From Ylistrum balloti (lineage: Eukaryota), in the NCBI RefSeq assembly GCF_031769215.1, contig NW_026781862.1, positions 434,001 to 498,000 of the forward strand: 64,000 nucleotides of DNA, written 5' to 3'. The notes under the pieces are model-generated. The model searched no databases. It had not been told where the DNA came from and saw only the letters and a program-made list of their open reading frames with translations. The position numbers and the translations under genes were made by a program. Numbering within the stretch: position 1 is the stretch's first letter; every line of letters starts with the position of its first letter. Below, one piece after another: positions 14,288 through 43,349 of the stretch.

Positions 14288-14467
14288 CTACAAAATACAA
14301 AGGGAATATAGAGCTACAGCTCCGAGGGTGACTAGGGTGTTAACGGAAACAGCTGGGGCAGACGACTCAGTCGATAGTCGGAAATTGCGTGTTACAGTTG
14401 GTGAACCATTGCTTCTGGTGCTGGTCTTCCTCTGAGAGGTCGGGAATCGTGATCTCAGCGTCTGAAT
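14288..14467 (-). CDS. Carbonic-anhydrase-related gene, terminal exon: IQTLRSRFPTSQRKTSTRSNGSPTVTRNFRLSTESSAPAVSVNTLVTLGAVALYSLCIL*
   Basis: Acceptor ...tatgtttcag, phase 0 matching the 18385 donor; 'RNFR' aligns with the alpha-CA 'DNFRP' motif; hydrophobic C-terminus with no cytoplasmic tail (GPI-signal-like). Confidence 0.8.
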   Translation of the reverse strand: MQTLRSRFPTSQRKTSTRSNGSPTVTRNFRLSTESSAPAVSVNTLVTLGAVALYSLCIL

Positions 14468-16014
14468 CTGAAACATATATACAACACATCGATATCACAA
14501 GTCCCAGCCGAATCAATAACAGGGTTCCCCTATCAGCAAATCTAGACACCATTGATCAAATGATGGTCCATGAACATATATGATAGTAATCGAAAAGAGA
14601 AGACAAGACGAAAGGTTATGAATAGGATATCGTATATAGAATTTAAGTCACTGAATGTCAATGATCAACTTTATATTTTTTTACATAATAAAAAATCCGG
14701 CCACATCGAAATGTTGAAGGCATAAATGCAAAATATCCCTAGTGAGAAGAAAATAACAATGAAAAGTGAGTGTAGACACAGATAACATCAGCACCATTAC
14801 AAAACTAGTGACTACGTAATGTTTTTAAAGTATGAATGACCTGTCTAGACAATTTCTTTGGAATATCTAGTGACATAAAGCACAGGTTACCTCTATATAA
14901 TAATGATAAATTCAAGGCGTGATTAATAAAAAGAAATTCTAGAAAATCACATTGAATGAATGTTTTGTCTCAGCGTTCAAATTGAAATAATACACAAAAA
15001 TAACAAAATCTTTCTGATCTTGAAATATGAAAAATAACATTAGATTTGGAAACTAGATGTTGGTAACTTTTACAATGTACCAAAGAAACCGGTTGTAGTC
15101 GGGGCAAATATTGGAAAGTGGGATTTCCAAGTGTTAGGGAGAACCACAGCACCCTTGATTGACCACGTGATCAGTGATACGTTTATGCTAATATTAGATA
15201 AGACACAATATATAATATAGATAAAATAAAAATTGATTTATCCATCTAATTGATAAAACCCTCACGTCGAGCAAATAATCCATAATTTTAAACAACAATG
15301 TTCATGTTTCTGATGATCGATCCGATTGCTTGCTTAATATTTTGGCAGGACAGAGACCTAGTAAGGTCCTTTCTGATTATGAGGAATCATGATAACTGTT
15401 GATATATAAATATAAATAAGAAAAATAAACGTATAACGTTACATTAATTTAAAAGTTAAAGTTTATCTAATAAAATCATCCATTAACCATAAGATGACTT
15501 TTTCAAGCCAAACAACCTGGAACGAGTGGAAACGTGGACTAAAATGAGTATTTTTGGTGTTTAATTAATTGATGTAAAGTACTCTTAAGCATATTAAAGT
15601 CCTTTTACAAATAACGCGGGACAAACGTCGTTGTTCAGTTTTGACAGAAATTAACACCAAGACGGCACAATTGGTAAAATTTCATCTTTTTTTTAACCTT
15701 AATTCATGTACTTACTGCTGTGTTTGTATAGGTACTATTCGTTATGCATGGAATTCAGATAAAATGGGTTGTTCTAAGGAGTTAAATGTAAAGTTATATT
15801 ACCTAATAATAATATTTCATACATTTAAAAATAAACTGATATTCAACATCGCCAATATCTTCAAGTAAGCCATAATGATAGTTTGATATTTTCTCATGTC
15901 AAGTGTTACAAATGAGACATTTACTACACTTCAAACGTTGCAGAATATTTGAGTTTCTTTATTTTCTTTATACCGCAGAAGAAAAAAAGGAAAAAATAAT
16001 TAATGAAAAGGTAA

Positions 16015-16280
16015 GGATTCATCAACCACCTCCATTTCTCATGAATAAGTCACGTCTTCATCAAACACCTCCATTTCTCACGAATAAGTCAAGTCTTTAT
16101 CAACCACCTCCATTTCTCATAAATAAGTCACGTCTTCATCAACCACTTCCATTTCTCATTCATAAGTCACGTCTTCATCAAACACCTCCATTTCTCATTC
16201 ATAAGCCACGTCTTCATCAACCACCTCCATTTCTCATAAATAAGTCACGTCTTCATCAACTATCTCCATTTCTCGTAAGT
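16015..16280. repeat. Minisatellite, 39-bp unit (CATCAACCACCTCCATTTCTCATAAATAAGTCACGTCTT), ~7 copies
   Basis: Tandem periodicity; explains ORF 15903..16298. Confidence 0.93.
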
Positions 16281-16554
16281 CGCGTCGACATCGCATGATC
16301 GTCTCGGTACTTTTAACCGTAGTTTGATAGGGAAAATACATGTATCCATGTCATATGGAATTCGTAAAGCTCATTTAATTTTGAGACGATAACGCGTGCG
16401 ACATATAGAATCATAGAACTCGATTGATTAATCCAATACTACATTGACACTCGTGTCGGATACCCTACAAATATTAATATCAACTGATATATGTAAATAG
16501 CATAGGCTTGGCTAGCATGGACGTCACTTTATAGAAATAGAACAAAACTCACAC

Positions 16555-16775
16555 AAAATAGGGAAATCATGCGTTTCATACAGCATGATGAAAGTTTTGT
16601 TGTAGGGAAAGATCGAGGTAAGCGGATAGTGGACAAAGTCTGCCGTGTCCTTGATTTCCTTTATGGCGGTTATATACGATGGAAATAATCGATAATTTCT
16701 TGTTATTTAAAGATATTATAAAAATATCCAAACGCGAAATTCAAGGACTTGGTAAGGTTTCTTTTCCTGTGTGAT
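16555..16775 (-). mobile_element. Penelope-like RT fragment (decayed)
   Basis: Minus-strand frames give NLTKSLNFAFGY / ISLNNKK / SAYLDLSL / LYETHDF, matching the PLE RT 'FNFTFRYIDDVLSLNN...SASYLDL...LYDKRDDF' region; homologous to 47100-47290. Confidence 0.75.
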
Positions 16776-16974
16776 AAATTGAGCTTTGAACTTGCAATAA
16801 AGCTCAGTGATAGTAATTGTCAGCCAGAGTTTCAGTTATTTACATGATTCAATGATCAGATAATATTTTGTCCATAAACATTTACATTATTCGCTGAATG
16901 AACAAGGCGTTCCTTTAGTTTGGAATGGGAAATAGTAGTTTAAATAGCAGAAAATCATATTATCTCTATTATCT

Positions 16975-17328
16975 AGAACCTAGCTCTGTACTTATAGTGT
17001 ACAACTAGCTCTGTCGTTATAGTGTACAACTAGGTCTGTCGTTATAGTGTACAACTAGTTCTGTCGTTATAGTGTACAACTAGATCTGTCGTTATAGTGT
17101 ACAACTAGGTCTGTCGTTATAGTGTACAACTAGCTCTGTCGTTATAGTGTACAACTAGTTCTGTCGTTATAGTGTACAACTAGCTCTGTCGTTATAGTGT
17201 ACAACTAGATCTGTCGTTATAGTGTACAACTAGGTCTGTCGTTATAGTGTACAACTAGCTCTGTCGTTATAGTGTACAACTAGCCCTGTCGTTATAGTGT
17301 ACAACTAGTTCTGTCGTTATAGTGTTCA
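16975..17328. repeat. Minisatellite, 25-bp unit (AGTGTACAACTAGNTCTGTCGTTAT), ~14 copies
   Basis: Near-perfect tandem; variation concentrated at one position. Confidence 0.97.
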
Positions 17329-17442
17329 AATACACGAAATATCGAATCCGTCAAAAAAAGCAACCTTTACAGAATATCTGTTTGTGATGCATGAGAGATC
17401 ACAGGAAGTGTCACTACCAAACCAATTTACTTACTACAAGGT

Positions 17443-18240
17443 GGAGATATCAGGTTACGTAAATACAAGGGGGAGATATCTGGTTACGTAAATACAAGGG
17501 GGAGATATCAGGTTACGTAACTACAAGGGGGAGATATCAGGTTACGTAAATACAAGGGGGAGAAATCAAGTTACGTAACTACAAGGGGGAAATATCAGGT
17601 TACGTAACTACAAGGGGAGATATCAGGTTACGTAACTACAAGGGGGAGATATCAGGTTACGTAAATACAAGGGGAAGTAATCAGGTAACGTAAATACAAG
17701 GGGGAGATATCAGGTTACGTAAATACAAGGGGGAAATATCAGGTTACGTAACTACAAGGGGAGATATCAGGTTACGTAACTACAAGGGGGAGATATCAGG
17801 TTACGTAAATACAAGGGGAAGTAATCAGGTAACGTAAATACAAGGGGGAGATATCAGGTTATGTAAATACAAGGGGGATATATCAAGTTACGTAACTACA
17901 AGGGGGAGATATCAGGTTACGTAAATACAAGGGGAGATATCAGGTTACGTAAATACAAGGGGAGATATCAGGTTACGTAACTACAAGGGGGAGATATCAG
18001 GTTACGTAACTACAAGGGGGAGAATCAGGTTACGTAACTACAAGGGGAGATATCAGGTTACGTAACTACAAGGGGGAGATATCAGGTTACGTAACTACAA
18101 GGGGGAGATATCAGGTTACGTAACTACAAGGGGGAGATATCAGGTTACGTAACTATAAGGGGGAGATGTCAGGTTACGTAACTACAAGGGGAGACACCAG
18201 GTTACGTAACTACAAGGGGAAGTAATCAGGTAACGTAACT
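17443..18240. repeat. Minisatellite, 28-29-bp unit (TACAAGGGGGAGATATCAGGTTACGTAAC/A), ~27 copies
   Basis: Tandem periodicity; most units contain TTACGTAA, many the 10-bp palindrome GTTACGTAAC. Confidence 0.97.
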
Positions 18241-18384
18241 TAGTGAAGTCACAGACTCAAGATCAGCTTATATTTAATTCATATTAGAGTCACGAACAAC
18301 AGCTACGCCCTTCTCTAACATGTAAGGACGATATGAATTCTCGTCGGGTAATGCATTATTGACGAGAAGTGACGGACGGCGTAC

Positions 18385-18524
18385 CTGGTCCTTATGTATA
18401 AGCAGTCTGTCGTTTGAAATACTCCAGCTGACGTCACAAGATGGATGCATTGGTCCCAGCTTGCCATGATATTGGTAAAACTTCAGGAGGTACTGGGGGA
18501 ATATATTCCTCAGTTTTACATTAT
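18385..18524 (-). CDS. Carbonic-anhydrase-related gene, internal exon: (D)NVKLRNIFPQYLLKFYQYHGKLGPMHPSCDVSWSISNDRLLIHKDQ
   Basis: Acceptor ttttatttccag, donor CAG|gtacgc, phase 1 to 0; aligns with alpha-CA 'LLP...YYRYxGSLTTPPCxExVxWxV...IS..Q'. Confidence 0.85.
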
Positions 18525-18994
18525 CTGGAAATAAAACAGAATTTATTTTAGTAATCGTAGACAAACATCAGAACTATTGCTGTTGTGATATGTTTACTGT
18601 ATTTTGTATTGTAAAATGAAAATAGCATACAGTGGTCCAAGGGAGACAACCGCTGAATAATATTACGCAAGAGACTAACCTACAAGCAGGTAGATATTCT
18701 TTCATAAAAGGCATAATATTAGTGACCCTAACATGGCTTGATATTCAAACAATACATTATATAATTCAAAACTTTAGCATGAGACATTGATGGCAAACTG
18801 AATATCCTTCTAATTTCTCACGAGACAATCACAATTTCAACCGATTTGGCGAAAAATGACACATTGGAGACCGGACTTATCAAAATAAACTAAACGTTCC
18901 TGAGACCTTCTATATGTTATTGATTGAAAAGATATATCGACCGCGACACAGGCAAAGTAGAAATAACGAGAGGTATTAGGGACCTTCCAGATAT

Positions 18995-20075
18995 AGAAAG
19001 ACAGTCAAAACCCTTCGAATTATTGAGAGATTGTCAGAACTTTCTATCGGATTATGGAGCGCTAATCAGAGACTTTCTGATTAAGGAGAGAAAATCAAAA
19101 AACCCTTCGAATTATGTAGATTTGTCAGAACCTTCTATCGGATTATGGAAAGATGGTCAGAGACTTCCGGATTATGGAGAGATTGCCAAAACCCTTCGAA
19201 TTATGTAGATTTGTCAGAACCTTCTATCGGATTATGGAGAGATGGTCAGAGACTTCCGGATTATGGAGAGCTGGTCAGAGACTTCCGGATTAAGGAGAGA
19301 AAAACAAAATCCTTCGAATTATGTAGATTTGTCAGAACCTTCTATCAGATTATGGAGAGATGGTCAGAGACTTTCGGGTTGTGGAGATATGGTCAGAGAC
19401 TTTCGGGTTGTGGAGAGATGGTCAGAGACTTTCGGGTTGTGGAGAGATGGTCAGAGACTTTCGGGTTGTGGAGAGATGGTCAGAGACTTTCGGGTTGTGG
19501 AGAGATGGTCAGAGACTTTCGGGTTGTGGAGAGATGGTCAGAGACTTCCGGATTATGGAGAGATGGTCAGAGACTTTCGGATTATGGAGAGATGGTCAGA
19601 GACTTCCGGATTATGGAGAGATGGTCAGAGACTTCCGGATTAAGGAAAGATGGTCAGAGACTTCCGGATTTTGGAGATATGGTCAGAGACTTCCGGATTA
19701 TGGAGAGATGGTCAGAGACTTTCGGGTTGTGGAGAGCTGGTCAGAGACTTCCGGATTATGGAGAGATGGTCAGAGACTTCCGGATTATGGAGATATGGTC
19801 AGAGACTTCCGGATTATGGAGAGATGGTCAGAGACTTTCGGGTTGTGGAGAGCTGGTCAGAGACTTCCGGATTATGGAGAGATGGTCAGAGACTTCCGGA
19901 TTATGGAGATATGGTCAGAGACTTCCGGATTATGGAGAGATGGTCAGAGACTTCCGGATTATGGAGATATGGTCAGAGACTTCCGGATTAAGGAAAGATG
20001 GTCAGAGACTTCCGGATTATGGAGAGATGGTCAGAGACTTTCGGGTTGTGGAGAGGTAGACAAACCCTTTGGATT
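18995..20075. repeat. Minisatellite, 29-bp unit (GGAGAGATGGTCAGAGACTTCCGGATTAT), preceded by longer degenerate higher-order units
   Basis: Tandem periodicity; source of ORFs 18924-20079. Confidence 0.96.
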
Positions 20076-23000
20076 ATAGAGAGATACAGATTCTCGTATT
20101 ACAGAGAGAACATTTCGGATTATATAGAGATAATGTGTTTCCTAATTTCACATATCTAGAAACAGTATTGTCATCACCTGGGAACTATTATCGCCCACAT
20201 ATTGCCTCCTTATCAGAAAACAAGGTACTTTGATGATGGTACATTGAGAGTCAGCTCAATGATGACATGTCAACTGTGTATACCTTTCGTTCTTTAATCG
20301 ATTTTCTGTCCAAATTACACCTTCTTATTCACTCGCAAACATGTCATCGAATGAGCGTCCGTCGAGAAGAAACGTGATAACGAAAGATTCTAACTTGCGG
20401 AAAGGCGATTTAAAACAAATTTATCACAATGTTAAACCTTGATTCCGTCCATATATAGAAATTTTGTCACTAGCGGTGTTGTTTTATTTCTTCACAAACG
20501 ACTTGAAATGGTCGTTAAAATTCACATCGAGACTTTAAAACCATGCTGATTTTGTGAAAGGTGCTATTTCGAGTCCCTTGTGATAATGTCAATGAACGTA
20601 CAGTATTGTCAAGTACTTAAACCATACTTACTCTATCCGTATCTTACCACAAGTAACAAATACTCAAGTAAGGCTAAACACGTTAGCCTTAATTTGACAC
20701 CATGATTTCCCAGTCATTCAGTATCATGAGTGACGTCATCTCATCCCCCACTTCCTAATTAGGATTTCAAGACTTCAAGTACTTTATATACTAGTAATAA
20801 TATCCGTTAATTTATTTCCATCAAGACACACCTAACATATCTAATGGTAATAAATAGAATATTGTGGACATGAGTTCAAACTCTTTATTTCAGAACCTGA
20901 CTTACGTAGGAATCCGGCGAGAAAAATAGAAACACAGATAGTACTGCTCAGGGCTTAGTACGGACACGCCTTTGTGATATAGGTAAGTTACCATGAAGAC
21001 AATAAGTACAGAATCAAGAGGACTTTTCAGAATGACTTTCGTCAGTTTCTTCATTTTTTGGTATACTGGTTAAGGAACCATTACTTTTTCTCCGGCACCA
21101 TCATGCACGTGCAATTTTTGCGGCATGTGTTTTATAAATACATCTCTGATCAAACCCAATTTTATCACTAAATGTTCGAGTAAATTAATTTTTAACAGCG
21201 GAGTAATTAAAATTTTATTTTTAAAAGTTACAGCAGTAGGGGATACGTACAGCACTTTAATTATCTACAAAAATAAACCCCACAAAATTTGTCTTAAAAT
21301 TATTACAATTATCTATAAAACTCACGGGAAGATATTTCTCTTGACAAAAAAAATATTATAATAATGGGTACTGTGCCCTATGTATGATAACATGTTTTTG
21401 TCACTGGTGACTTTCTACGAAATATGAAAAAAATGGATTGAATCCACGAACTAAAAAAGTTGGTCATAAAACACTGTATCTTTCTCGGTGAAGTAAGTTG
21501 TGTCGAATGGTGACCAACTGATATCATTTCATACCATAAATAGGAAACTCCTTAAAGTTCAATTTTCTTCAATATCATATGACTTTTGAAAGTATTCTAC
21601 GTGAAATGGAAATTTATATGAAATAATTTTCATTATGCGTGTTTCAACATAAGTATATTGCCGTTACACTGAGAGCTAAATATATTGTGTCGCGTTGTAC
21701 AGATAGAGTACTCACACAAGATTTTATACCTTGATAATTCTGCAACAGGTAGTACTTGATAAATTGTACTATCACTATTGTTTAAGGGAACGGTAATAAA
21801 AACTCAGGTCAGTGTTTAATGTCTATTGTTTTACACTCAGTAAGTAATGATTGAGTAGTCTCCCTTCCTCTGTTCCGGACCGTTACATTGATGTTACACC
21901 AGTAATACTGTTTCAGAATTTCCTTAGATGCTTGTAAAACATCAACCTACACTTTATAAGTCCACTTTTCACTGTTTTATGGAGTTCATAAAAATTAGTT
22001 GATTGATGTAAAAGCGAAGTTTTAAATAACAGTCATCGCGCGTTACCTATATGTTGTACCACGGGACCGATACAGATCGAAGTCCGTGGTTGTAAACTCA
22101 CGTGCATGTCAATTGAAATATATTTAACAACAAAAAATGTTAAAAATGAGAAAATTGTAACTAAGAAGTCTAAACACGTGTTTATAATTAAATGCATTAC
22201 AACACGAATACCCGGTTCTTTAGTTTTCTATATATTCTAAGCATTCTCTTAAAACTGTATATTCTTCCGGGTCGATTATAACAAACGTTGTTTATCGTCT
22301 TTACAGAAATGTTATCTGACTCGGGGCATAGATTTGTTGGTATACTTCAAAAAGACCTTACAAAGGACACAAATTATATATTTCCATTCCACTATCAACT
22401 TCCTATTTAGTTCTATGTAAACACGCCCATCTTTCTGTGAACGGGTGGTAAACCACCGGAATTCACTTCCTAATGCCGTTGTAACGTCACGAACAAGCAA
22501 AACTTTGGAACCCGATTGGATAATCATTGGAGGCAAACTGAATGTGTTTATAACCATGAACTAGACAATAACACACTGATCCATATTCCGGATACTAATT
22601 CTTTAAACTCTGATCTGGATATATAGGCTTAATAAGCCTGCGTCCAGTATATTATCAATATTATTATTATTATTTGTTAAGCGTATGAATTCACATTCCG
22701 CATTCAGGAGACGGCCATCAAAAAGTATTCCTAATAGATATAAATGTTATGTTTATATTCTGTGTTGTATTCACCTTTGTGTCATTACTACCCTAAATTA
22801 TAGTATATGAGACTGTGTGCTACAATATGCCTGATTATGTCGGTGTATGATTAAACAAAAATGGCCGCCCGTTATTTTCGGTATCAACATACATTGTACT
22901 GACATATCCGAAGTTGTTGGACTTAAATAAGAGGTCATCACAATAAAGTAACTTACAAAGCAATCAAATTATAACAGAACAAATTTATTTTCAAACATGT

Positions 23001-23769
23001 AAGTTTGCCACAAAATCGTTATTGTCACCATAACATACGTGATTACCGAGTTTGTCAACTTTGTCTGCAAGACGTCGATCTGACAGTCCACATATAGAAT
23101 CCGTTACAAACAAAATGTCGTCACTTACTGACTGTAGTGACTACCATTTATAATTTCCATAGTGATTCTATAAGGAACATTGCATCAATCCACTCCAGGC
23201 ACGACAACACAGTTAACACTGACACATCGTTCGTGAAATCTGACTTAAAGCCGCATCACTTTTTACTGGAATATCAATGCGCACCAAACTGCTTTTATTT
23301 CATACGAAAATTGTGACCATACGATTTTTATATAATTGTTATTTGTGATGACATGGGGATCTATATTACTACGGCTGTTTTCGGATTTGAACTTGTTGAC
23401 GTCAGAAACGGATTATACAGGAAATTTAAATGACGTTTTCCTCGTTTTTTTTTAAATCCTAGATACACCTATTTGAAAATGACAATATCCACAATAAACC
23501 ATTAACAGATGGTAAACAATTAATATGAAGATGATTCGAGATGAAGAAAAATTTCATGACGTCTTGTATCTATCTTCCAGCACGCTCACTGACTTCATAT
23601 CAACTGTATATTCCAGTCGTAAAAGTTAATTATTTAAATGTTACAAGAGAAACAAAAGTACAAGATGAAGAAGTGTGGCCTCGTTATTTATCAATACACT
23701 AATACTACAGTTGCTGTATGCTGGAAGATAACCCAATCCCAATACAGACTCTCATCCAATTACATAGAA

Positions 23770-25790
23770 AATCTCTCCATCAATAGTCTCCTAACTAATG
23801 ATATAGAAAATATCTTCATCAATACAGTCTCCTAACAAATTATATAGAATATCCTTCATCAATACAGTCTCCTAACAAATTATATAGAATATCCTTCATC
23901 AATACAGTCTCCTAAATTATATAATTATATAGTCTCCTAACAAATTATATAAAATCCTTCATCAATACAGTCTCCTAACTAATTATATAGAAAATCCTTC
24001 ATCAATACAGTCTCCTATTATATAGAATATCCTTCATCAATACAGTCTCCTGACTAATTATATAATTATATAGTCTCCTAACTAATTATATAAATATCTT
24101 CATCAATACAGTCTCCTAACAAATTATATAGAATATCCTTCATCAATACAGTCTCCTAACAAATTATATAGAATATCCTTCATCAATACAGTCTCCTAAC
24201 AAATTATATAGAAAATATCTTCATCAATACAGTCTCCTAACAAATTATATAGAATATCCTTCATCAATACAGTCTCCTCACAAATTATATAGAAAATCCT
24301 TCATCAATACAGTCTCCTAACAAATTATATGGAATATCCTTCATCAATACAGTCTCCTAACTAATTATATAGAATATCCTTCATCAATACAGTCTCCTGA
24401 CAAATTATATAGAAAATCTCTTCATCAATACAGTCTCCTGACAAATTATATAGAAAATCTCTTCATCAATACAGTTCAAATTATATAGAAAACCCTTCAT
24501 CAATACAGTCTCCTCACAAATTATATAGAATATCCTTCATCAATACAGTCTCCTGACTAATTATATAGAAAATATCTTCATCAATACAGTCTCCTAACTA
24601 ATTATATAGAAAATATCTTCATCAATACAGTCTCCTAACAAATTATATAGAATATCCTTCATCAATAGTCTCCTGACTAATTATATAGAAAATATCTTCA
24701 TCAATACAGTCTCCTAACAAATTATATAGAATATCCTTCATCAATACAGTCTCCTAACTAATGATATAGAAAATCCTTCATCAATACAGTCTCCTAACAA
24801 ATTATATAGAAAATCCTTCCTTCATCAATACAGTCTCCTAACTAATTATATAGAAAATCCTTCATCAATACAGTCTCCTAACTAATTATATAGAAAATAT
24901 CCTTCATCAATACAGTCTCCTAACAAATTATATAGAAAATATCTTCATCAATACAGTCTCCTAACAAATTATATAGAATATCCTTCATCAATACAGTCTC
25001 CTGACTAATTATATAGAATATCCTTCATCAATACAGTCTCCTAACAAATTATATAGAATATCCTTCATCAATAGTCTCCTAACTAATGATATATAAAATC
25101 CTTCATCAATACAGTCTCCTAACAAATTATATAGAATATCCTTCATCAATACAGTCTCCTAACAAATTATATAGAATATCCTTCATCAATACAGTCTCCT
25201 AACTAATTATATAGAAAATCCTTCATCAATACAGTCTCCTAACTAATTATATAGAAAATCCTTCATCAATACAGTCTCCTAACTAATTATATAGAAAATC
25301 CTTCATCAATACAGTCTCCTAACTAATCATATAGAAAACTCTTCATCAATACAGTCTCCTGACAAATTATATAGAAAATCCTTCATCAATACAGTCTCCT
25401 AACTAATTATATAGAATATCCTTCATCAATACAGTCTCCTCACAAATTATATAGAATATCCTTCATCAATACAATCTCCTAACTAATTATATAGAATATC
25501 CTTCATCAATACAGTCTCCTAACAAATTATATAGAAAACCCTTCATCAATACAGTCTCCTAACAAATTATGTAGAATATCCTTCATCAATACAGTCTCCT
25601 GACAAATTATATAGAAAATCTTCAAAATCTCTTCTAACTAATTATATAGAATAAAATCAGTCTTGACAAATTATATATAAAATCAATACAGTCTCCTAAC
25701 AAATTATATAGAAAATCTCTTCATCGATACAGTCTCCTGACAAATTATATAGAAAATCTCTTCATCAAAACATTCTCCTCGCAAATTATA
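23770..25790. repeat. Minisatellite, ~40-bp unit (TCCTTCATCAATACAGTCTCCTAACAAATTATATAGAATA), ~50 copies
   Basis: Tandem periodicity read directly. Confidence 0.97.
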
Positions 25791-26027
25791 CACATAACCA
25801 TATTTCTCAAAATCAAAAGACAGATAGATTATGACATGATGTTTATAAATTGTCATTACAATAATACGTATATGTAGAACTTTGCATAGCAATATAGACG
25901 TTACACGTGGATCCGATGATAAACTTTACATTATGGTTTCAGGCGGAAAATGTAATGTGTTGTGTTAGATAAATGTATTCCTGTCCACAAGATTGTTAAT
26001 ATGACAATCACTGTTTTAATGTACAGG

Positions 26028-27000
26028 TTGTATTTTGGCGAGGTTGAAGAAAGACAAAATTTGCGAGCTTTTGGCGAGCGATATTTGTCTTTCTATCCCG
26101 AACCAAAACGAAGCTTCTATTTTAAGACACTGACTATTTATTCTATTTATCCTGCCACATTGATTGACGATCATACCATCAAAACTTCAACAATGTTGAT
26201 GTTCAGTCTTTGTTTACCTGACGTGGACTTCATGCTGAATTTTGCCTGACAACGTACGTCAAAATAATTGTTCCGCGCGGAAATATAGTTCCAAACTTCA
26301 AACAATAAGGCAGCTATTTTAATAATTGTGATTTTTGTAAATGAATTTGTTCATTACAACATATGAAATAGCTATTTCAACAATTTTTTTATATTGTCAA
26401 ACATTATTTAAGTAAAGTCAGAAAGTAATTCTGTTGTACTAACGCACGTGCTAAAATGCAGCTGTTACCATCACTACGAATATAGCGACAATGGCAGTAC
26501 CAGTTGCAGGATAAGTAGAGAATATTGCCAAAGGTTTGGAACTTTTGTATTTCTTCATCCTCACCAAAATACGGCATATATTTGAAGACACTGACCATGC
26601 ATTCTATTTATCCTGCAACATTGACTGCAAATCAGATCATTAAAACTTCAACAGTTTCTTGTTCAATCTTTGTTTACACGACACTGATGTTACGCTGAAT
26701 TTTGCCTGATAACGTTCGCCAAATTAATTGTTCCGTGCAGAAATATAGTTCCCAACTTCAACGGATATGACAGCGATTTTATGAATTTTCGTAAATTAAC
26801 TTGTTCATTACAACAAATAAAATAATTTATTTTCAATAGTTATTTATCTTGTTCAAAAAATTTTTAAGTAAATTCATAAATTGATTCCGCAAATTCACGC
26901 ACGTGCTAAAAATACAGCTGTTTTCCATCACTCCCGAACACAGCAAAAATATACGTGGCAGACGTATTCTGACAATGGCGGTGCCAGTTGTAGGGTAAAT
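26028..27000. repeat. Diverged tandem duplication (~430-480-bp units, 26090-26520 and 26525-27000) with a ~48-bp inverted repeat (26028-26076 vs 26526-26573)
   Basis: GACACTGAC...ATTCTATTTATCCTGC...GCTGAATTTTGCCTGA...GAAATATAGTTCC...CACGTGCTAAAA...GACAATGGC occurs twice; GTATTTTGGCGAGGTTGAAGAAAGACAAAA is inverted at 26544-26573. Confidence 0.85.
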
Positions 27001-27160
27001 AAATACATGTAGTTTTCTTTTACAAAAATAGGATCCAGAATATACATTTATTAACTATATTGATTTCATGAAATGTATAAACACGATGTTTTACAGGGAG
27101 ACATTATTACATCTAAACTTATCGTTAAGTGTAATTATTAATTAATTCGATAGTATTTAC

Positions 27161-27224
27161 CTGTCCTTTCACCTGCCTTGAAGAGTTCTTCGAACGTTGG
27201 AACCAGCTCAGAATTTTGACTCGT
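27161..27224 (-). CDS. Carbonic-anhydrase-related gene, internal exon: TSQNSELVPTFEELFKAGERT(D)
   Basis: 64 nt, acceptor atatcttttag, donor G|gtaaat, phase 0 to 1, exactly bridging the neighbouring exons. Confidence 0.8.
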
Positions 27225-27601
27225 CTAAAAGATATAATGTAACGAGATGTGTTAAAATTCTGATATAAACACATACAGTTCAAATACCTCTGTTATTCAG
27301 TCTATAAAACTACAATTTAAAACAATTTTTCACAAATCTTCTGTAAAAGTTGTTAAGTATTGTTAATAACTAGTATGAATACCTCGGTAATTACAGACAC
27401 GGTACAACAGGGTAAACAAACAACGTTGTAACTTAAAGATCAGAACGTGATATTTCGCGCTATAATTTTAAAAGCAACAAAATCATAGCGTGATGAAATC
27501 ATGAATAACTGGACAGATACATGTCAGGAATCAGAACAAATAGAATTATTAAAGAAAAGGACGAATGATAAGATAAAGACAGATTATCTATTATACCTTA
27601 C

Positions 27602-27703
27602 CATAGTGTCCTGGACCCAGAATGACAAGGCAGACAGTCCGTCTTTCTGACCTGTAGCCTCCGTTCGGTTTGCATACTTTGTATTGTAGCTTAGGAAATA
27701 TAT
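27602..27703 (-). CDS. Carbonic-anhydrase-related gene, internal exon: [IYFLS]YNTKYANRTEATGQKDGLSALSFWVQDTM (5' boundary inferred)
   Basis: Donor ATG|gtaagg; matches alpha-CA 'LHIVHYNxKY...A...DGLAVLG'. The phase-0 start at 27703 is preceded by TAT, not AG; the nearest AG (27690-27691) is out of phase. Confidence 0.75.
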
Positions 27704-28180
27704 ATATAACAATGATAAATATATATATAACAATGTATATATACTATGATAAATATATACATATGATAAATATATATATAACAATGATAAATATATATAT
27801 AAATATATATATAACAATGATAAATATATATAATATATATATAACAATGATAATATATATACAATGATAAATATATAACAATGATAAATATATATATAAA
27901 TATATATACATAACAATGATATATATATATATATAACAATGATAAATATATATATACAATGATAAATATATATATAACAATGATAAATATATACATAACA
28001 ATGATAAATATATATATAACAATGATAAATATATGATAAATATATATATAACAATGATAAATATATACATAACAATGATAAATATATACATAACAATGAT
28101 AAATATATATATACATAACAATGATAAATATATATATAACAATGATAAATATATATACATAACAATGATAAATATATATA
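27704..28180. repeat. AT-rich minisatellite (AACAATGATAA(AT)n), abutting the CA-like exon
   Basis: Read directly; source of ORFs 27584-28165. Confidence 0.95.
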
Positions 28181-28549
28181 TATTACATATATAATTGATA
28201 ACTATGTCCTGATGTTATTGAAGGGGGAGGGGTGTTAGCGATTTCATAAAAAGTAAATGATTTTAAGCATACTAATTTTCTAATTCAATAGCAAGAACAA
28301 ATATACATGGATTTTAATGTAATCGCACTAAAGAATATACGATCGTTGTAAAAGTGCATTAATATTGAGATAATGGGACAGAGCACAGATATTAAATCTT
28401 AACGATAGTTTTTGGAATGTATAACCAATTATATGAAGCTCAAGTTTCGTAAGATATGATATATATATATCTTCGTTTAAAAAATTGGAAGTACAAATTC
28501 TACTTTGTCAGAAATCGTGTTTCCTCTTAATATTTCCTCCAAGATATAC

Positions 28550-28683
28550 CTGCATAACGAACTGTCTCTTATTGTACAGATGGATGGTCGAGTTGTCCAT
28601 TAGCATAGTGATTTGGACAGCTTTGTATCTATTAGTAAGGCCACCTCCAGTCACGTACAGCTCGCCCTCCAGATCCATGGCGT
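28550..28683 (-). CDS. Carbonic-anhydrase-related gene, internal exon: (Y)AMDLEGELYVTGGGLTNRYKAVQITMLMDNSTIHLYNKRQFVMQ
   Basis: Acceptor ctgctctag, donor CAG|gtatat, phase 1 to 0; aligns with 'V.GGGL...YKA.QFHFHWG...SEH...G.RYPME'; the QFHFHWG position reads QITMLMD. Confidence 0.85.
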
Positions 28684-29273
28684 CTAGAGCAGATTATCAT
28701 CAATACAATAACTATCATGGTATCTATCGGGATAAATTAATGGACGAATAAATATGTTGTATATTGAAACTGTTATGATGTGATTAAAGTAAACATCGAT
28801 CTTATCACTTGTATAATAGGATAACACGACCAATTGATGTGATGTTTTACCAGGAAACGAATTCAACAGAAATTGTTTTAAATTTACGATAACATTATCA
28901 CAACGTCGTCTGGAAACATAAATTAAATGTGTAGTTATAGGCGTTAAACAATTAGAAACACGAAAAGACTCACATGACAACACGATAAGTCTTTAATCAA
29001 ACAGGTGATGTATTGTTAACAAGCTAAATTCTTTCTCATATTAAGGTTGACACACCGCAGAGAGGCGAGACCTAATATGATTTATAACAATGATATCTGG
29101 AGGATACAGCGTGCACCCCTGACACCGAAATTAACAACGTTTATTCCGTAATTGTCTCAACTTACAACTTGTTTAGGAAACTTTATCTACGTACTGTTTA
29201 AATTATCCTTGTTATATAAGAAAAGTCATCAAAATGTAGATATCGTCCAAAAATACGATATTCTAGATCTTAC

Positions 29274-29408
29274 ATCCTTCTGATGTTTTTCGTAGAACAA
29301 CGGTGGCATCGTCGAATCCTTCCAGTTTGAAGGACGTTGCTGCCTTATACTTTAGTGACGACCCTTCCGGTATGTTGACAGGGTAGTCCGTACTGCACGT
29401 GCCCTCAA
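29274..29408 (-). CDS. Carbonic-anhydrase-related gene, internal exon: (x)EGTCSTDYPVNIPEGSSLKYKAATSFKLEGFDDATVVLRKTSEG
   Basis: Acceptor ttcattgtacag, donor T|gtaaga, phase 1 to 1; 'C..DYPVNI' corresponds to alpha-CA 'C.G..QSPINI', and SEGY to NNGH. Confidence 0.8.
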
Positions 29409-29944: not shown

Positions 29945-30910
29945 TATATCTCCTCCTCTATAACCCAGTCGTTACGTGTGATACATCCTTGTTACCAGTT
30001 GTCTCCCCCTACTATCCTCTATATTGATATCTATATATCTACTCCTCTATAACCCAGTCGTTACGTGTGATACATCCTTGTTACCAGTTGTCTCCCCCTG
30101 TATATTTTGTCCGTCTACTATCGTCTATATTGATATCTATACATATCCTCTATAACCCAGTCGTTACGTGTGATACATCCTTGTTACCAGTTGTCTCCCC
30201 CTGTATATTTTGTCCGTCTACTATCGTCTATATTGATATCTATACATATCCTCTATAACCCAGTCGTTACGTGTGATACATCCTTGTTACCAGTTGTCTC
30301 CCCCTGTATATTTTGTCCGTCTACTATCCTCTATATTGATATCTATATATATATAACCCAGTCGTTACGTGTGATACATCCTTGTTACCAGTTGTCTCCC
30401 CCTGTATATTTTGTCCGTCTACTATCGTCTATATTGATATCTATACATATCCTCTATAACCCAGTCGTTACGTGTGATACATCCTTGTTACCAGTTGTCT
30501 CCCCCTGTATATTTTGTCCGTCTACTATCCTCTATATTGATATCTATATATCTACTCCTCTATAACCCAGTCGTTACGTGTGATACATCCTTGTTACCAG
30601 TTGTCTCCCCCTGTATATTTTGTCCGTCTACTATCCTCTATATTGATATCTATACATATCCTCTATAACCCAGTCGTTACGTGTGATACATCCTTGTTAC
30701 CAGTTGTCTCCCCCTGTATATTTTGTCCGTCTACTATCCTCTATATTGATATCTATATATATCCTCTATAACCCAGTCGTTACGTGTGATACATTCTTGT
30801 CATCAGTTGTCTCCCCCTGTATATTTTGTCCGTCTACTATCCTCTATATTGATATCTATATATATCCTCTATAACCCTGTCGTTACGTGTGATACATCCT
30901 TGTTACCAGT
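29945..30910. repeat. Minisatellite, 103-bp unit, ~9 copies
   Basis: Repeated ORF starts 30067/30170 and 30580/30683 are 103 bp apart; unit TATAACCCAGTCGTTACGTGTGATACATCCTTGTTACCAGTTGTCTCCCCC... Confidence 0.96.
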
Positions 30911-31061
30911 TGACTTCCCCTGTGTATTCTGAACTGTGCTGCTCTCTTTCCGTATATTGATCTTTTGTAGTTGCTGTCTGGTTTCAGTGGTGATGGAGCA
31001 CACATCTTTCGGTATATTGTAAGCTGTTGTGTACAGTTTTGCCAATAGTTGCCAGACATAT
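30907..31061 (-). CDS. Candidate upstream exon of the CA-related gene: YVWQLLAKLYTTAYNIPKDVCSITTETRQQLQKINIRKESSTVQNTQGKST
   Basis: AG/GT boundaries (tattacag; G|gtaaca), open frame ending in phase 1, compatible with exon 29408; no recognisable homology or signal peptide. Confidence 0.3.
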
Positions 31062-31439
31062 CTGTAATATTCCGGTATTGTTCGGAACATTTCGGCACAC
31101 AGTGTATTTTAATATCTAAACATTCTGTTTGCTGAAATATATTAGCATGTTTTACTGAAAGTCTAGGCGAGATAAGAAAAAAAAACATCGTTCCTATCTT
31201 AATTTTCATAGAACTTAACATCTTAGAACATCATATTGATTGTTTCATTCATTTAGCTATGGACGATACAGATAAGTTCTCCTGACAGCGGAAAACGAAA
31301 GTAGAATTGATATGTACAAGTCGTTTAAAAATTGTATTATCATTTTTCAAATGTTTCATATAGACAGACTATTTATATAATAAACAGTTGATTTATTTCA
31401 AAATTCTCAAATAATGCAGAAAGTTATTTACAATAGCCT

Positions 31440-32395
31440 TCTCAGTGTTGTTGGAATGACTGACACAATTGTATAATGGGTATACAATGTAACAGAGTGA
31501 GGTGTCATTATACTTGTCCGGGTTATGACATTATAGTCCGTAGTCAGTATAATGTAACAGAGTGAGGTGTCATTATACTTGTCCGGGTTATGGCATTTTA
31601 GTCCGTAGTCAGTATAACGTAACAGGGTGAGGTATAATGGTAAGTGTCTGGTTTTGACATTTTAGTCCGTAGTCGGTATGATGTTACAGGGTGAGGTGTC
31701 ATGCTACGTGTCTGAGATGACATTATAGTCCGTAGTCAGTATAATGTAATAGGGTGAGGTGTCATGCTACGTGTCTGGTTATGACATTTTAGTCGGTAGT
31801 CAGTATAATGTTACAGGGTGAGGTGTCATGCTACGTGTCTGGGATGACATTATAGTCCGTAGTCAGTATAATGTAACAGGGTGAGGTGTCATGCTACGTG
31901 TCCGGGTTATGACATTTTAGTCCGTAGTCAGTATAATGTAACAGGGTGAGGTGTCATGCTATGTGTCTGGTTATGACATTTTAGTCCGTAGTCAGTATAA
32001 TGTTACAGGGTGAGGTGTCATGCTACGTGTCTGGGATGACATTATAGTCCGTAGTCAGTATAATGTTACAGGGTGAGGTGTCTATGATGACATTATAGTC
32101 CGTAGTCAGTATGTTACAGGGTGAGGTGATGCTACATTATAGTCCGTAGTCAGTATAATGTTACAGGGTGAGGTGTCATGCTACGTGTCTGGTTATGACA
32201 TTTTAGTCCGTAGTCAGTATAATGTTACAGGGTGAGGTGTCATGCTACGTGTCTGGGATGACATTATAGTCCGTAGTCAGTATAATGTAACAGGGTGAGG
32301 TGTCATGCTACGTGTCTGGTTATGACATTTTAGTCCATAGTCAGTATAATGTAACATGGTGAGGTGTCATGGTACTTGTCCGGGTTATGACAATT
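31440..32395. repeat. Minisatellite, 63-65-bp unit (GTATAATGTAACAGGGTGAGGTGTCATGCTACGTGTCTGGTTATGACATTTTAGTCCGTAGTCA)
   Basis: Tandem periodicity read directly. Confidence 0.95.
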
Positions 32396-37995: not shown

Positions 37996-38419
37996 CTTTG
38001 CCGTGTATTCTCCCGTTAAATACAATTCCCGTGTTCTGCTTTTCAATCATATAATATTATAGGATATATAAAAACTTTCTATACAATTGACATTTTGTTT
38101 ATGTTTTCTTCTCCCTATCATTCATCTGACAGGTTCCAGTAAGTATTCTTTGCTCACACTTGACCTATAACCTATAACAGAACGTGTTTGGTTTTGCAAC
38201 ACACCAAACATCCCAACTTGCTACGTCACAGTACCGGAAGCTGGTGGTGTATACATACCGGAACATAGACATATGTAATATACTGAGCTCAGGAAATGAT
38301 CTGACGTTTAAGGGAGAGAGAGCAATGACCTTCTTATTTAAAATCATTTGTCAGAGTGGAAGGTAACGTAAAGATAACACGAGGCAATAGCATCATTTGT
38401 AGAAGAGATTTTAGTATTA

Positions 38420-39720
38420 GATACACGAGACAGGCAGTGATTAAGAAAGTATTAGAGACACGTGACAGACAGTGATCAATTTAGTAGAAGAGACACGAGA
38501 CAGACAGTGATCAATTTAGTAGGAGAGACACGAGACAGACAGTGATCAATTTAGTAGGAGAGACACGAGACAGACAATGATCAATTAAGTAGGAGAGACA
38601 CGAGACAGACAGTGATCAATTTAGTAGGAGAGACACGAGACAGGACAGACAGTGATCAATTTAGTAGGAGAGACACGAGACAGACAATGATCAATTAAGT
38701 AGGAGAGACACGAGACAGGACAGTGATCAATTTAGTAGGAGAGACACGAGACAGGACAGTGATCAATTTAGTAGGAGAGACACGAGACAGACATTAATCA
38801 ATTTAGTAGGAGAGACACGAGACAGACAGTGATCAATTTAGTAGGAGAGACACGAGACAGACAATGATCAATTAAGTAGGAGAGACACGAGACAGACAGT
38901 GATCAATTTAGTAGGAGAGACACGAGACAGGACAGACAGTGATCAATTTAGTAGGAGAGACACGAGACAGACAATGTTATCTATTTATTAGGTGTGACAC
39001 GAGACAGGACAGTGATCATTTTAGTAGGAGAGACACGAGACAGGACAGTGATCAATTTAGTAGGAGAGACACGAGACAGACATTAATCAATTTAGTAGGA
39101 GAGACACGAGACAGACAGTGATCAATTTAGTAGGAGAGACACGAGACAGACAATGATCAATTAAGTAGGAGAGACACGAGAAAGACAGTGATCAATTTAG
39201 TAGGAGAGACACGAGACAGGACAGACAGTGATCAATTTAGTAGGAGAGACGAGACTGACAGTGATCAATTTAGTAAGAGAGACACGAGACAGACATTGAT
39301 CAATTTAGTAGGAGAGACAAGAGACAGACAGTGATCAATTTAGTAGGAGAGACACAGACAGTGATCAATTTAGTAGGAGAGACACGAGACAGACATTGAT
39401 CAATTTAGTAGGAGAGACACGAGACAGACAGTGATCAATTTAGTGGAGAGACGCGAGACAGACAAAGATCAATTATGTGAAGAGACGCGAGACAGGAAGT
39501 GATCAATTTAGTAGAAGAGACACAAAACAATGATCAATTTAGTGGGGAGACACGAGACAGGCAGCGATCAATTTAGTAGAAAAGACACGAGACAGACAAT
39601 GATCAATTTAGTAGAAGAGACACGAGAAAGACAGTGATCAATTTAGTGGAGAGACATGAGACAAACAATGATCAATTTAGTGGGGAGACATGAGACAGGT
39701 AGCGATCAATTTAGTGGAGA
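38420..39720. repeat. Minisatellite, 35-bp unit A (GTGATCAATTTAGTAGGAGAGACACGAGACAGACA)
   Basis: Tandem periodicity read directly. Confidence 0.96.
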
Positions 39721-41240: not shown

Positions 41241-42124
41241 GTGGCCTCATTCATTGAGAATATATGATACTGGCAATTGTTTTGCGTAAAATTGATGGCA
41301 GGGACCATCAGAAAATAGACTAAATTAATTTAGTAGTTAGTGTGATTGTCTGCTAAGCGAGACAGACAAATTGCAAATTGAACAAGAGATCAGCTCGGGT
41401 TATAGTGACGCCTCGCGGGCGTGTATTGTATCACACAGATTTATAATCGATAAATTCACGTTTAAAAACATGGAAGGTGGTTGAAGTGAATGAAAATGGA
41501 AACCAACACATGTTACTTTTGAGAATAAGACTGCAAACCGTACCATTATCAAATATATCCATACTAACATTTAGCATTAATCTGATGAACACAAATGAAA
41601 CTGGATTTTTTCCAGTTAGGGTATTGTAATTATTTTGAAAGCTAATCTTGCCTAATTTCGGATTGGCATGGTAAGAAGTTCCCCATACGTTCTGTAAATT
41701 ACGTTACACATGGTATTCCATCAACGGTCCCGGCATACATTATCTACTATACTACAAACACTGCAGTGAAACTACATTGTAAAATAAAAATAAAATATGC
41801 TTACCATCCGATGTTTCTGAATCTATAACACAGAACTGAAACACAAGAAGGAGTAAAGAAAATAAGTTAGACATGTTCCAGTGCACGTGAGGCGTTGCAG
41901 TCCCTGTGTATACAGTAACTTCAGTGATGGTGTGGTGCGCTACAGATCAGTGATGTCACGTTCTAGTCGGGAGTTCCGCGATCTACACAGCAAACAAAAT
42001 GCTGTAGATTTCAGTCATTTTTCTAGGATAATAGTTTACAAGAAGGAACGGACCACTTCTGACAGAGACTGAAAGACGGATCAATTGACACAACGATTAA
42101 ACCATGGAAATGGTAAATTGCTGC

Positions 42125-43074: not shown

Positions 43075-43349
43075 CTGTACAACTATGACAAAACAAGGCT
43101 CGGTAATGACACCAACTTTTGTCAATTGTTAACACTATAGCACTCGAAATTGATAAAAATATTAGAAGAACCTGTTTTGATGTAAAGGGCACGATCGACA
43201 CTTTAGATATAATCAAAATGTGGCCATGTAAACCGACCGTCGCCCTTCAAAATTGTTCACCTTTCATTTCACTTTGGATAAAACCAAAACAGGTGAGCGA
43301 TGCAGGCCCTTTTGGCTTCTTATTATACATACTTCATTGTGGCAAAGCG

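What the first reader, a model, noticed from the sequence alone, without database searches (positions are those of the whole stretch)
14288..29408. Membrane-anchored carbonic-anhydrase-fold protein that has lost essentially the whole catalytic apparatus
Seen: six phase-compatible minus-strand exons (one acceptor inferred) give ~250 aa: EGTCSTDYPVNI...SEGY...TGGGLTNRYKAVQITMLMDNSTIH...FVMQIYFLSYNTKY...DGLSAL...FYQYHGKLGPMHPSC...RNFRLSTESSAPAVSVNTLVTLGAVALYSLCIL*. Established: active alpha-CAs need His94/His96/His119 (QFHFHWG, ELH), Glu106, Thr199 (GSLTTPP) and usually His64. Secreted CAs keep a Cys23-Cys203 disulfide. By my manual alignment this protein has H64Y, H94T, H96L, E106I, H119Y and T199G, yet keeps both Cys, N-glycan sequons (NST, NRT, NGS) and a GPI-like tail. 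Inference: a non-enzymatic extracellular CA-fold binding or scaffold protein, far more eroded than vertebrate CARPs, which are cytosolic and lose 1-2 His. In a mollusc it could be a co-opted shell, mantle or adhesion surface protein. The ORF track misses it because every exon is short.
Basis: partly seen in the sequence, partly recalled or inferred. Interest (0 to 1): 0.72.

Follow-up and report, generated by a model that had tools for sequence, protein, structure and literature searches.

The report
Scallop catalytically dead carbonic anhydrase-like gene
This is a real seven-exon scallop gene for a surface-anchored carbonic-anhydrase look-alike that has lost every residue needed for catalysis yet is kept by selection; it is a new lineage-specific example of the known "carbonic-anhydrase-related protein" theme, not a new kind of protein.

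Summary
A seventh exon encoding the signal peptide lies upstream at 41874-41805, outside the flagged interval. The gene is already in RefSeq as XP_060066976.1, "carbonic anhydrase 4-like" of Ylistrum balloti (274 aa). Orthologues exist in Pecten maximus, Argopecten irradians, Mizuhopecten yessoensis and one unnamed relative known only from intron-less mRNA contigs.

The protein matches Pfam Carb_anhydrase (83 bits), and its AlphaFold model hits only carbonic anhydrases plus vaccinia D8 in the PDB. In all five orthologues His64, His94, His96, Glu106, Glu117, His119 and Thr199 are replaced. The Cys pair, two N-glycan sequons, the signal peptide and a GPI-type tail are kept. dN/dS is 0.11-0.16 overall and 0.12 on the Y. 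balloti branch alone, so it is not a pseudogene.

The exon-3 acceptor reads AT in this assembly, next to a TA microsatellite. A short-read contig from another run has a canonical AG there.

CARP XI lacks all three His, CA10/CA11 are secreted, and a GPI-anchored CARP is known in Toxoplasma. Verdict: a new member of a known kind. Function (probably ligand binding) and tissue are untested.

The parts
41805..41874 (-). Exon 0: start codon and signal peptide (23 codons plus 1 base, donor GTAAGC, phase 1).
   Evidence: Found by scan. Matches the N-terminus of P0001 and is 100% identical to P0004 residues 1-23.
29274..29408 (-). Exon 1: first Cys of the conserved pair, the YPVNI motif (QSPI/V-type in catalytic CAs), ending in ...TSEG. 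Acceptor cag, donor GTAAGA, phase 1 at both ends.
28550..28683 (-). Exon 2: Tyr in place of His64; ITML in place of FHFH (His94 to Thr, His96 to Leu) with a 4-residue deletion after it; invariant NST sequon; Ile in place of Glu106; His107 kept; Gln in place of Glu117. Donor CAG|GTATAT, phase 0.
27602..27703 (-). Exon 3: Tyr in place of His119, the SYNTKY and DGLSAL motifs, conserved N-x-T sequon. Donor ATG|GTAAGG. In this assembly the acceptor dinucleotide (27705-27704) is AT, not AG.
   Evidence: A contig of run X1 has ...CTAG|ATT TAC GTC CTA AGC..., a canonical acceptor.
27705..28193 (.). TA-rich micro/minisatellite (period 2 and about 21) that abuts the exon-3 acceptor. It is the likely cause of the local assembly or allele problem.
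27161..27224 (-). Exon 4: 64 nt covering the helix region (Pfam positions about 143-169). Acceptor tttag, donor GTAAAT; phase 0 in, phase 1 out.
18385..18524 (-). Exon 5: YHGKLGP in place of YPGSLTTPP (Thr199 to Gly), second Cys of the pair, the VSW motif. Acceptor ttccag, donor CAG|GTACGC.
14288..14467 (-). Exon 6: conserved Ser/Thr/Arg/Lys-rich linker with the NGS sequon, RNF(R/K)L (the N-W-R-P motif region of CAs), then ESSA, a short spacer and a 15-residue hydrophobic C-terminus (GPI-type signal). Stop TAG at 14290-14288.

Best explanation
The locus is the single-copy Ylistrum balloti gene for a Pectinidae-specific, catalytically dead alpha-carbonic-anhydrase-related protein. The product enters the secretory pathway through the signal peptide in exon 0. 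It folds into a trimmed CA beta-sandwich: it lacks about 20 N-terminal residues, has two small loop deletions, and keeps the Cys23-Cys203-type pair. It is N-glycosylated at two conserved sequons and is most likely attached to the outer face of the plasma membrane by a GPI anchor. It cannot bind the catalytic zinc or activate water, because His94, His96, His119, Glu106, Glu117, Thr199 and the shuttle His64 are all replaced. These replacements are the same, or of the same non-ligand kind, in every orthologue. It probably descends from a GPI-anchored or secreted catalytic CA of the CA IV/IX/XIV-like group, and two other CA genes lie 35-55 kb away on the same contig. By analogy with CA10/CA11, RPTP gamma/zeta and vaccinia D8, I infer that it now works as a binding or scaffold surface protein through its remodelled, highly conserved former active-site face. 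Shown here: gene structure, family, fold, residue losses, conservation, and expression in one relative. Inferred: GPI anchoring, binding function, tissue.
For: The seven exons are colinear with P0001 and identical to P0004. PF00194 scores 83.4 bits for P0004 and 77-80 bits for the orthologues, against 279 bits for the nearest catalytic relative P0007. All 50 Foldseek PDB hits listed (376 at E <= 0.001) are carbonic anhydrases, CA variants or CA-fold proteins at E about 1e-12, with the acatalytic vaccinia D8 at rank 4. Catalytic positions are replaced in all five orthologues, while P0007, P0008 and P0009 in the same alignment keep NNGH, HxHWG, GSEH, E-x-H and GSLTTP. HMMER alignments to CA II place Y, T, L and Y at positions 64, 94, 96 and 119 with no gap between the flanking anchors. 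Summing per-exon Nei-Gojobori counts gives dN/dS of 0.14 versus P. maximus, 0.11 versus A. irradians and 0.16 versus the mRNA contig. The Y. balloti branch alone gives 0.12, or 0.07 in the CA-core exons. Two Logan runs hold intron-less contigs of 1264 and 1117 nt carrying the complete orthologous CDS, so it is transcribed and spliced in that relative. A canonical exon-3 acceptor is present in the run X1 contig. The neighbouring gene L002 is a canonical CA.
Against: No RNA data for Y. balloti itself could be reached, so expression and the e2-e3 junction are unverified in this species. In the reference assembly exon 3 has no AG acceptor, and the RefSeq model bridges it with a non-canonical GG..TC junction. 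The GPI anchor and signal peptide are judged by eye, without a predictor. The AlphaFold model is only moderately confident (mean pLDDT 64). No ligand is known. dS is near saturation (1.2-2.0), so the ratios are approximate.
Confidence: 0.8

Rival explanations
1. The Y. balloti copy is a recently inactivated pseudogene. Its exon-3 acceptor was destroyed by expansion of the adjoining TA microsatellite, and only the orthologues in other scallops are functional.
For: The assembly reads AT where P. maximus has AG. No in-frame AG lies upstream. The RefSeq model needs a non-canonical junction.
Against: The ORF is intact across all seven exons and the other eleven splice sites are canonical. dN/dS on the Y. 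balloti branch is 0.12. A short-read contig at depth about 10 from run X1 carries a canonical CTAG acceptor in phase and a more orthodox IYVLS sequence. The reference reading is therefore an assembly error or one allele.
Confidence: 0.05
2. It is still an enzyme: a CA or another hydrolase that uses a different metal site, for example the invariant His at alignment positions 103, 188 and 212 with Tyr119.
For: Three His are invariant in the clade and the former active-site strands are its most conserved part.
Against: All seven canonical catalytic residues are replaced, mostly by non-ligand side chains such as Thr, Leu, Ile and Gly, with Gln at 117 and Tyr at 64 and 119. The loop after position 96 is shortened by four residues. 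Loss of the zinc-binding His is the accepted reason why CARPs are inactive (PMC2873310). The geometry of the alternative His residues could not be examined here.
Confidence: 0.05
3. It is a shell-matrix or mantle-secreted protein, a nacrein-like non-catalytic CA released from its anchor, that acts in biomineralisation rather than in cell-surface binding.
For: CA-domain proteins are part of the shell-matrix tool kit of four bivalves, including P. maximus (PMC5854119). Mytilus nacrein-like CA has mutated His (PMC6639325). A VWA-domain exon lies nearby at 53550-54119.
Against: There is no acidic or Gly/Asn repeat insert of the nacrein type. The C-terminus is a membrane-anchor signal. No proteomic or tissue data link this protein to shell, and no supplement was available to check.
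Confidence: 0.1

Closest known systems
Vertebrate CARP X / CARP XI (CA10, CA11)
   Same: A CA fold with a signal peptide. It is extracellular or secretory and catalytically dead through loss of two (X) or all three (XI) zinc His (PMC9032886). It acts by binding a partner, neurexin (PMC6487704, PMC8024894).
   Different: CA10 and CA11 are soluble, not GPI-anchored, and are described as highly conserved across species, with CARP X-like sequences in insects and nematodes (PMC2873310). The scallop protein is found only in Pectinidae. Its best sequence matches are CA II, IV, IX and XIV at 20-29% identity, which points to an independent origin. Orthology was not tested with a tree.
Toxoplasma gondii GPI-anchored CA-related protein TgCA_RP
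   Same: A GPI-anchored CA-domain protein with substituted zinc His and no detectable activity (PMC5437132).
   Different: It is an eta/alpha-like protist protein of 519 aa that loses two His and keeps Glu106 and Thr199. It is located in rhoptries. There is no close sequence relationship.
Vaccinia virus D8 ectodomain and the CA-like domains of RPTP gamma/zeta
   Same: Membrane-tethered extracellular CA folds that do not catalyse and serve as binding modules. D8 is rank 4 of the Foldseek hits. RPTP CA-like domains are mentioned in PMC2873310.
   Different: These are anchored by a transmembrane segment or are part of a large receptor. Their ligands (chondroitin sulfate for D8, contactins for RPTPs) are recalled from my own knowledge and were not checked here.
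GPI-anchored or membrane catalytic CAs (CA IV, IX, XIV type; coral and mollusc homologues P0007, P0008)
   Same: Signal peptide, Cys23-Cys203-type pair, C-terminal hydrophobic tail. They are the best PDB sequence matches and are the nearest relatives found beyond the orthologues.
   Different: These keep the complete catalytic set and score about 280 bits on PF00194, against about 80 bits here.

Membership tests
Alpha-carbonic anhydrase domain (Pfam PF00194) | Whole-protein score above the gathering threshold (27 bits) | tested here: met
   P0004 scores 83.4 bits, E 2.5e-23, profile positions 20-242. Single exons give only E 0.02-0.05.
Alpha-carbonic anhydrase domain (Pfam PF00194) | CA fold in three dimensions | tested here: met
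   The AF2 model (pLDDT 64, core 70-90) matches CA II, IX and XII at Foldseek E about 1e-12, probability 1.00, TM 0.50-0.64.
Catalytically active alpha-CA (EC 4.2.1.1) | Zinc ligands His94, His96 and His119 | tested here: not met
   Thr, Leu and Tyr (Ser in P0005) occupy these positions in all five orthologues.
Catalytically active alpha-CA (EC 4.2.1.1) | Gatekeepers Glu106 and Thr199, second-shell Glu117, shuttle His64 | tested here: not met
   These are Ile, Gly, Gln and Tyr/Phe respectively. His107 is kept.
CA-related proteins (acatalytic CA-fold proteins in the broad sense) | A CA domain lacking one or more zinc-binding His | tested here: met
   All three are lacking. The definition follows PMC2873310.
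CARP VIII / X / XI orthology groups | Clustering with CA8, CA10 or CA11 in a tree, and the high cross-phylum identity (about 40-45%) typical of these groups | tested here: inconclusive
   No CARP sequence was available by reference for a tree. The 60 best PDB matches shown (of 204) are CA II, IV, IX and XIV, with no CARP among them. Identity to any non-pectinid CA is 29% or less, which argues against orthology.
GPI-anchored surface protein | N-terminal signal peptide; small omega/omega+2 residues; a 5-10 residue spacer; a hydrophobic C-terminus of 15 or more residues with no cytoplasmic tail | tested here: inconclusive
   The pattern is present and conserved in all orthologues: ESSA or ESAA, then about 7 residues, then 15-16 hydrophobic residues to the end. 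No GPI or signal-peptide predictor and no biochemistry were available.
Secreted/membrane CA disulfide (Cys23-Cys203) | Both Cys present at the aligned positions | tested here: met
   The second Cys (residue 198 of P0004) is invariant across the alignment, including the catalytic CAs. The first Cys (residue 28 of P0004) is kept in all four full-length clade members and lies in the same region as the N-terminal Cys of the catalytic CAs.
Nacrein-like shell matrix CA | A CA domain interrupted or followed by an acidic or Gly-X-Asn repeat domain | tested here: not met
   The 274-aa protein has no such insert.

The most novel reading that the evidence does not exclude
The clade is an independent, scallop-specific birth of a pseudo-enzyme receptor. 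The former CA cavity is more conserved than the rest of the protein (dN/dS about 0.06 in exon 2) and is capped by an invariant N-glycan sequon. It may have been re-used as a specific ligand pocket on the cell surface, for example for a matrix glycan, a transporter partner, or a non-catalytic CO2/bicarbonate-related signal.
Probability: 0.3. Interest if true: 0.5.

Novelty: new member of a known kind. Interest (0 to 1): 0.35.

Why it matters
Four scallop RefSeq annotations name this protein "carbonic anhydrase 4/9/14-like". That naming would count it as an enzyme in surveys of biomineralisation or acid-base genes, for example in ocean-acidification studies. It almost certainly cannot hydrate CO2. 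It adds a lineage-restricted, strongly constrained and probably GPI-anchored case to the short list of extracellular CA-fold pseudo-enzymes, and it gives a tractable family in which to ask what a dead CA cavity is re-used for. It also documents a local error or variant allele in the Y. balloti assembly that forces a non-canonical splice in the RefSeq model.

Tried and rejected
1. A 22-nt micro-exon at 28909, which I first considered between e1 and e2. It gives an in-frame stop if read further, and it is unnecessary because e1 joins e2 directly and matches the orthologues.
2. U12-type or AT-AC splicing of intron 2, and two alternative acceptors: 27690|27689, which is out of frame, and 27677|27676, which is in frame but skips nine residues. 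I dropped these once P. maximus showed a plain CAG acceptor and run X1 showed AG in this species.
3. An apparent second 'FYNTKY' pseudo-exon at 18679-18598, and a resemblance between the sequence upstream of e5 and e4. Neither is conserved in P. maximus or A. irradians, so I treat both as chance.
4. Paralogue search in the own genome with e2 and e5 gave only self-matches. The PF00194 genome scan did not pick up this gene even at E <= 10.
5. The RNA-run search found only one run, of unrecorded type, which I judged to be DNA.
6. The literature search by accession found nothing. No supplement was held for the P. maximus shell proteome paper. The SRA run ids were not found in any paper.
7. The third word search, with alignment A4, was swamped by bird CA9 and added no mollusc paralogues.
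8. P0002, the second hit of the representative search, is a repeat protein matched by chance.
Full report
**What is in the sequence**

Reading the DNA gives the following exons:

| Exon | Coordinates | Splice signals and phase |
|---|---|---|
| e1 | 29408-29274 | acceptor ...tacag, donor GTAAGA, phase 1 at both ends |
| e2 | 28683-28550 | acceptor ...ctctag, donor CAG\|GTATAT, phase 0 out |
| e3 | 27703-27602 | donor ATG\|GTAAGG |
| e4 | 27224-27161 | acceptor ...cttttag, donor GTAAAT; found by a phase-aware scan |
| e5 | 18524-18385 | acceptor ...tttccag, donor CAG\|GTACGC |
| e6 | 14467-14288 | acceptor ...gtttcag, stop TAG |

A scan upstream found a seventh exon, e0 at 41874-41805. It starts with ATG, encodes a classical hydrophobic signal peptide and ends in a phase-1 GTAAGC donor. 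The gene therefore spans 14288-41874, which is wider than the flagged interval. There are no N runs in the window.

**How the exons were searched**

Each exon was searched by reference. Singly they are barely recognisable. e3 hits PF00194 at E 0.047 (profile positions 111-139) and e5 at E 0.024 (positions 171-216). e1, e2 and e6 give nothing. e5 alone finds CA XIV in the PDB at E 0.036. The six-frame PF00194 scan of the whole genome lists 81 matches at E <= 10 from roughly 17 CA loci, but none from this gene. e2 and e5 have no paralogue in the genome.

Because the family scans left the exons open, I spent the exhaustive representative search on e5. It returned one true hit, P0001 (84% identity). 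This is XP_033748523.1, "carbonic anhydrase 9-like" of Pecten maximus, 274 aa.

**Identity of the gene and organism**

The word search with P0001 returned the following:

- P0004 = XP_060066976.1, "carbonic anhydrase 4-like [Ylistrum balloti]". It lies on a contig of 1,188,910 bases, exactly the length of G000:C5, which holds the window.
- P0003, from Argopecten irradians.
- P0006/P0010, from Mizuhopecten yessoensis.
- P0005, from Logan assemblies.

P0004 is 100% identical to the window's seven exons. All whole-protein analyses below use P0004 or its orthologues, which have their own references.

P0001 maps to the window exon by exon in the same order. The same seven-exon layout is seen in the P. 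maximus locus L003 and the A. irradians locus L006.

**Family and fold**

- P0004 scores 83.4 bits on PF00194 (cut-off 27). The orthologues score 77-80 bits. The nearest catalytic relative, P0007, scores 279 bits, which shows how far the clade has drifted.
- An AlphaFold2 model of P0004 on an eight-sequence alignment has mean pLDDT 64, with the core at 70-90.
- Foldseek against the PDB returns only carbonic anhydrases or CA-fold proteins among the 50 hits listed (E about 1e-12, probability 1.00, TM 0.50-0.64). The acatalytic vaccinia D8 ectodomain is at rank 4.

**Catalytic residues**

In the MAFFT alignment A4, the catalytic CAs P0007, P0008 and P0009 show NNGH, (L/F)H(F/L)HWG, GSEH, E-x-H and GSLTTP. 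The five scallop proteins show the following instead:

| CA II position | Role | Scallop clade |
|---|---|---|
| His64 | proton shuttle | Tyr or Phe |
| His94 | zinc ligand | Thr |
| His96 | zinc ligand | Leu, followed by a 4-residue deletion |
| Glu106 | gatekeeper | Ile (Thr in P0005) |
| His107 | second shell | His (kept) |
| Glu117 | second shell | Gln |
| His119 | zinc ligand | Tyr (Ser in P0005) |
| Thr199 | gatekeeper | Gly |

HMMER alignments of P0001 and P0004 to CA II give the same assignments. They are anchored without gaps by Y88...Q92 on one side and by NTKY on the other.

Features that are kept:

- Both Cys of the secreted-CA disulfide.
- The NST and N-x-T sequons, invariant in all five orthologues.
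- The NGS sequon, in four of five.
- The linker in e6, conserved across the clade.
- The ESSA, spacer and 15-16-residue hydrophobic C-terminus.

The first about 20 residues of a normal CA domain are absent: the Pfam match starts at profile position 20.

**Is it a living gene?**

I computed Nei-Gojobori counts per exon and summed them, without concatenating sequences.

| Comparison | dN/dS | dN | dS |
|---|---|---|---|
| vs P. maximus | 0.14 | 0.16 | 1.16 |
| vs A. irradians | 0.11 | | |
| vs the mRNA contig L004 | 0.16 | | |

Exon 2, which carries the former zinc strands, is the most constrained at about 0.06.

A three-taxon decomposition gives the Y. balloti branch alone dN/dS 0.12, or 0.07 in the CA-core exons. 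This is no higher than the other branches. dS is close to saturation, so the numbers are rough, but the direction is unambiguous.

P0005 is encoded without introns on contigs of 1264 and 1117 nt in two Logan runs. These can only be mRNA, because the gene has six introns in the three scallop genomes examined. The family is therefore transcribed and correctly spliced in at least one relative.

For Y. balloti itself no RNA run was found.

**The exon-3 acceptor**

In the window the two bases before e3 (27705-27704) are AT. A 490-bp TA-rich micro/minisatellite starts right there. P. maximus has ...ttccag|GTT TAC ATC at the homologous place.

The RefSeq model avoids the problem. It reads nine bases past the e2 donor (QVYL) and enters e3 at 27694, which implies a GG..TC intron.

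I laid the contigs of run X1 on 26900-27790. X1's type is not on record; I take it for a whole-genome DNA run because its 556 Mb of contigs is close to the genome size, and it holds 61% of the stretch's words. One contig at depth about 10 differs from the assembly by three substitutions and three small insertions, all within 27697-27707. Applying these changes gives ...CATACTAG|ATT TAC GTC CTA AGC. That is a canonical phase-0 acceptor, and the resulting sequence IYVLS fits the orthologues (V/I-Y-I/V-L-S) better than the assembly's IYFLS.

The same contig has eight substitutions and one 10-bp insertion in the flanking introns and none in the rest of e3 or in e4.

I conclude that the AT is a consensus error at the microsatellite edge or a variant allele, not gene death.

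**Context**

- Two other CA genes lie on the same contig, 35-55 kb from the window's start. L002 keeps the full catalytic set. L001 keeps HFHWG but has Gln at position 119.
- The introns of the gene are largely tandem arrays: units of 29, 35, 37, 40, 103 and 127 bp, covering about 7 kb of the 12.4-kb first intron.
- A VWA-domain exon lies at 53550-54119 on the plus strand.

**Comparison with what is known**

Acatalytic CA-fold proteins are an established class (PMC2873310). The relevant precedents are:

- CARP X lacks two His and CARP XI lacks all three (PMC9032886).
- CA10 and CA11 are secreted neurexin ligands (PMC6487704, PMC8024894).
- RPTP beta/gamma have extracellular CA-like domains (PMC2873310).
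- Toxoplasma has a GPI-anchored CARP (PMC5437132).
- In Mytilus several mantle CAs, including the nacrein-like one, have mutated His (PMC6639325).

What is particular here is the completeness of the loss, which covers ligands, gatekeepers, second shell and shuttle, combined with strong constraint, a probable GPI anchor and restriction to Pectinidae.

Only five clusters were found, and the next relatives are at 29% identity or less. The word search can miss distant kin, so absence outside scallops is not proven.

No paper in the held library mentions these accessions.

**Mechanism**

Shown here:
- It is a secretory-type CA fold without a catalytic apparatus.
- It is conserved under purifying selection.

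Inferred:
- It is tethered by GPI.
- It works by binding a partner through the conserved former cavity, as CA10/CA11, the RPTP CA-like domains and D8 do.

A shell-matrix role, a residual enzymatic role and pseudogene status are the rivals, and each is less supported.

**Verdict**

This is a new member of a known kind. Its main practical value is correcting enzyme-style annotations in scallop genomes.

Noticed in passing
window 27690-27710 (minus-strand exon-3 acceptor): The assembly differs from a short-read contig of run X1 by three substitutions and three small insertions within 11 bp at the edge of a TA microsatellite. RefSeq XP_060066976.1 bridges the defect with a non-canonical GG..TC junction, giving VYL instead of IYV/IYF.
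   Followed up: yes
L001 (G000:C5:377500-383500, plus strand): A neighbouring CA paralogue keeps HFHWG (His94 and His96) but has Gln in place of His119 (IQMIFF for LH(L/F)V..). It may be a second weakened or acatalytic CA in the same cluster. L002 (C5:396000-400000, minus strand) looks fully catalytic.
   Followed up: partly
window 16018-18240, 19004-20085, 23740-25790, 30009-32392, 35206-38021, 38659-41238: The introns of the gene are packed with long minisatellite arrays, with units of 25-127 bp and up to 76 copies. About 7 kb of the 12.4-kb first intron is tandem repeat. Some arrays create long spurious ORFs, for example 19145-20059.
   Followed up: no
window 53550-54119 (+): A 190-aa open frame matches the von Willebrand factor type A domain (PF00092, E 6e-10). 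It is probably an exon of a neighbouring extracellular-matrix-type gene.
   Followed up: no
L006 19770-23335 (A. irradians orthologous locus): A reverse-transcriptase (RVT_1) ORF of 732 aa and a 343-aa ORF sit inside an intron of the orthologous gene, which indicates a retroelement insertion.
   Followed up: no
window 43326-43847 (-): A 174-aa open frame just upstream of exon 0 gives a weak DUF7751 match (35 bits, with no single stretch passing). Its meaning is unclear.
   Followed up: no
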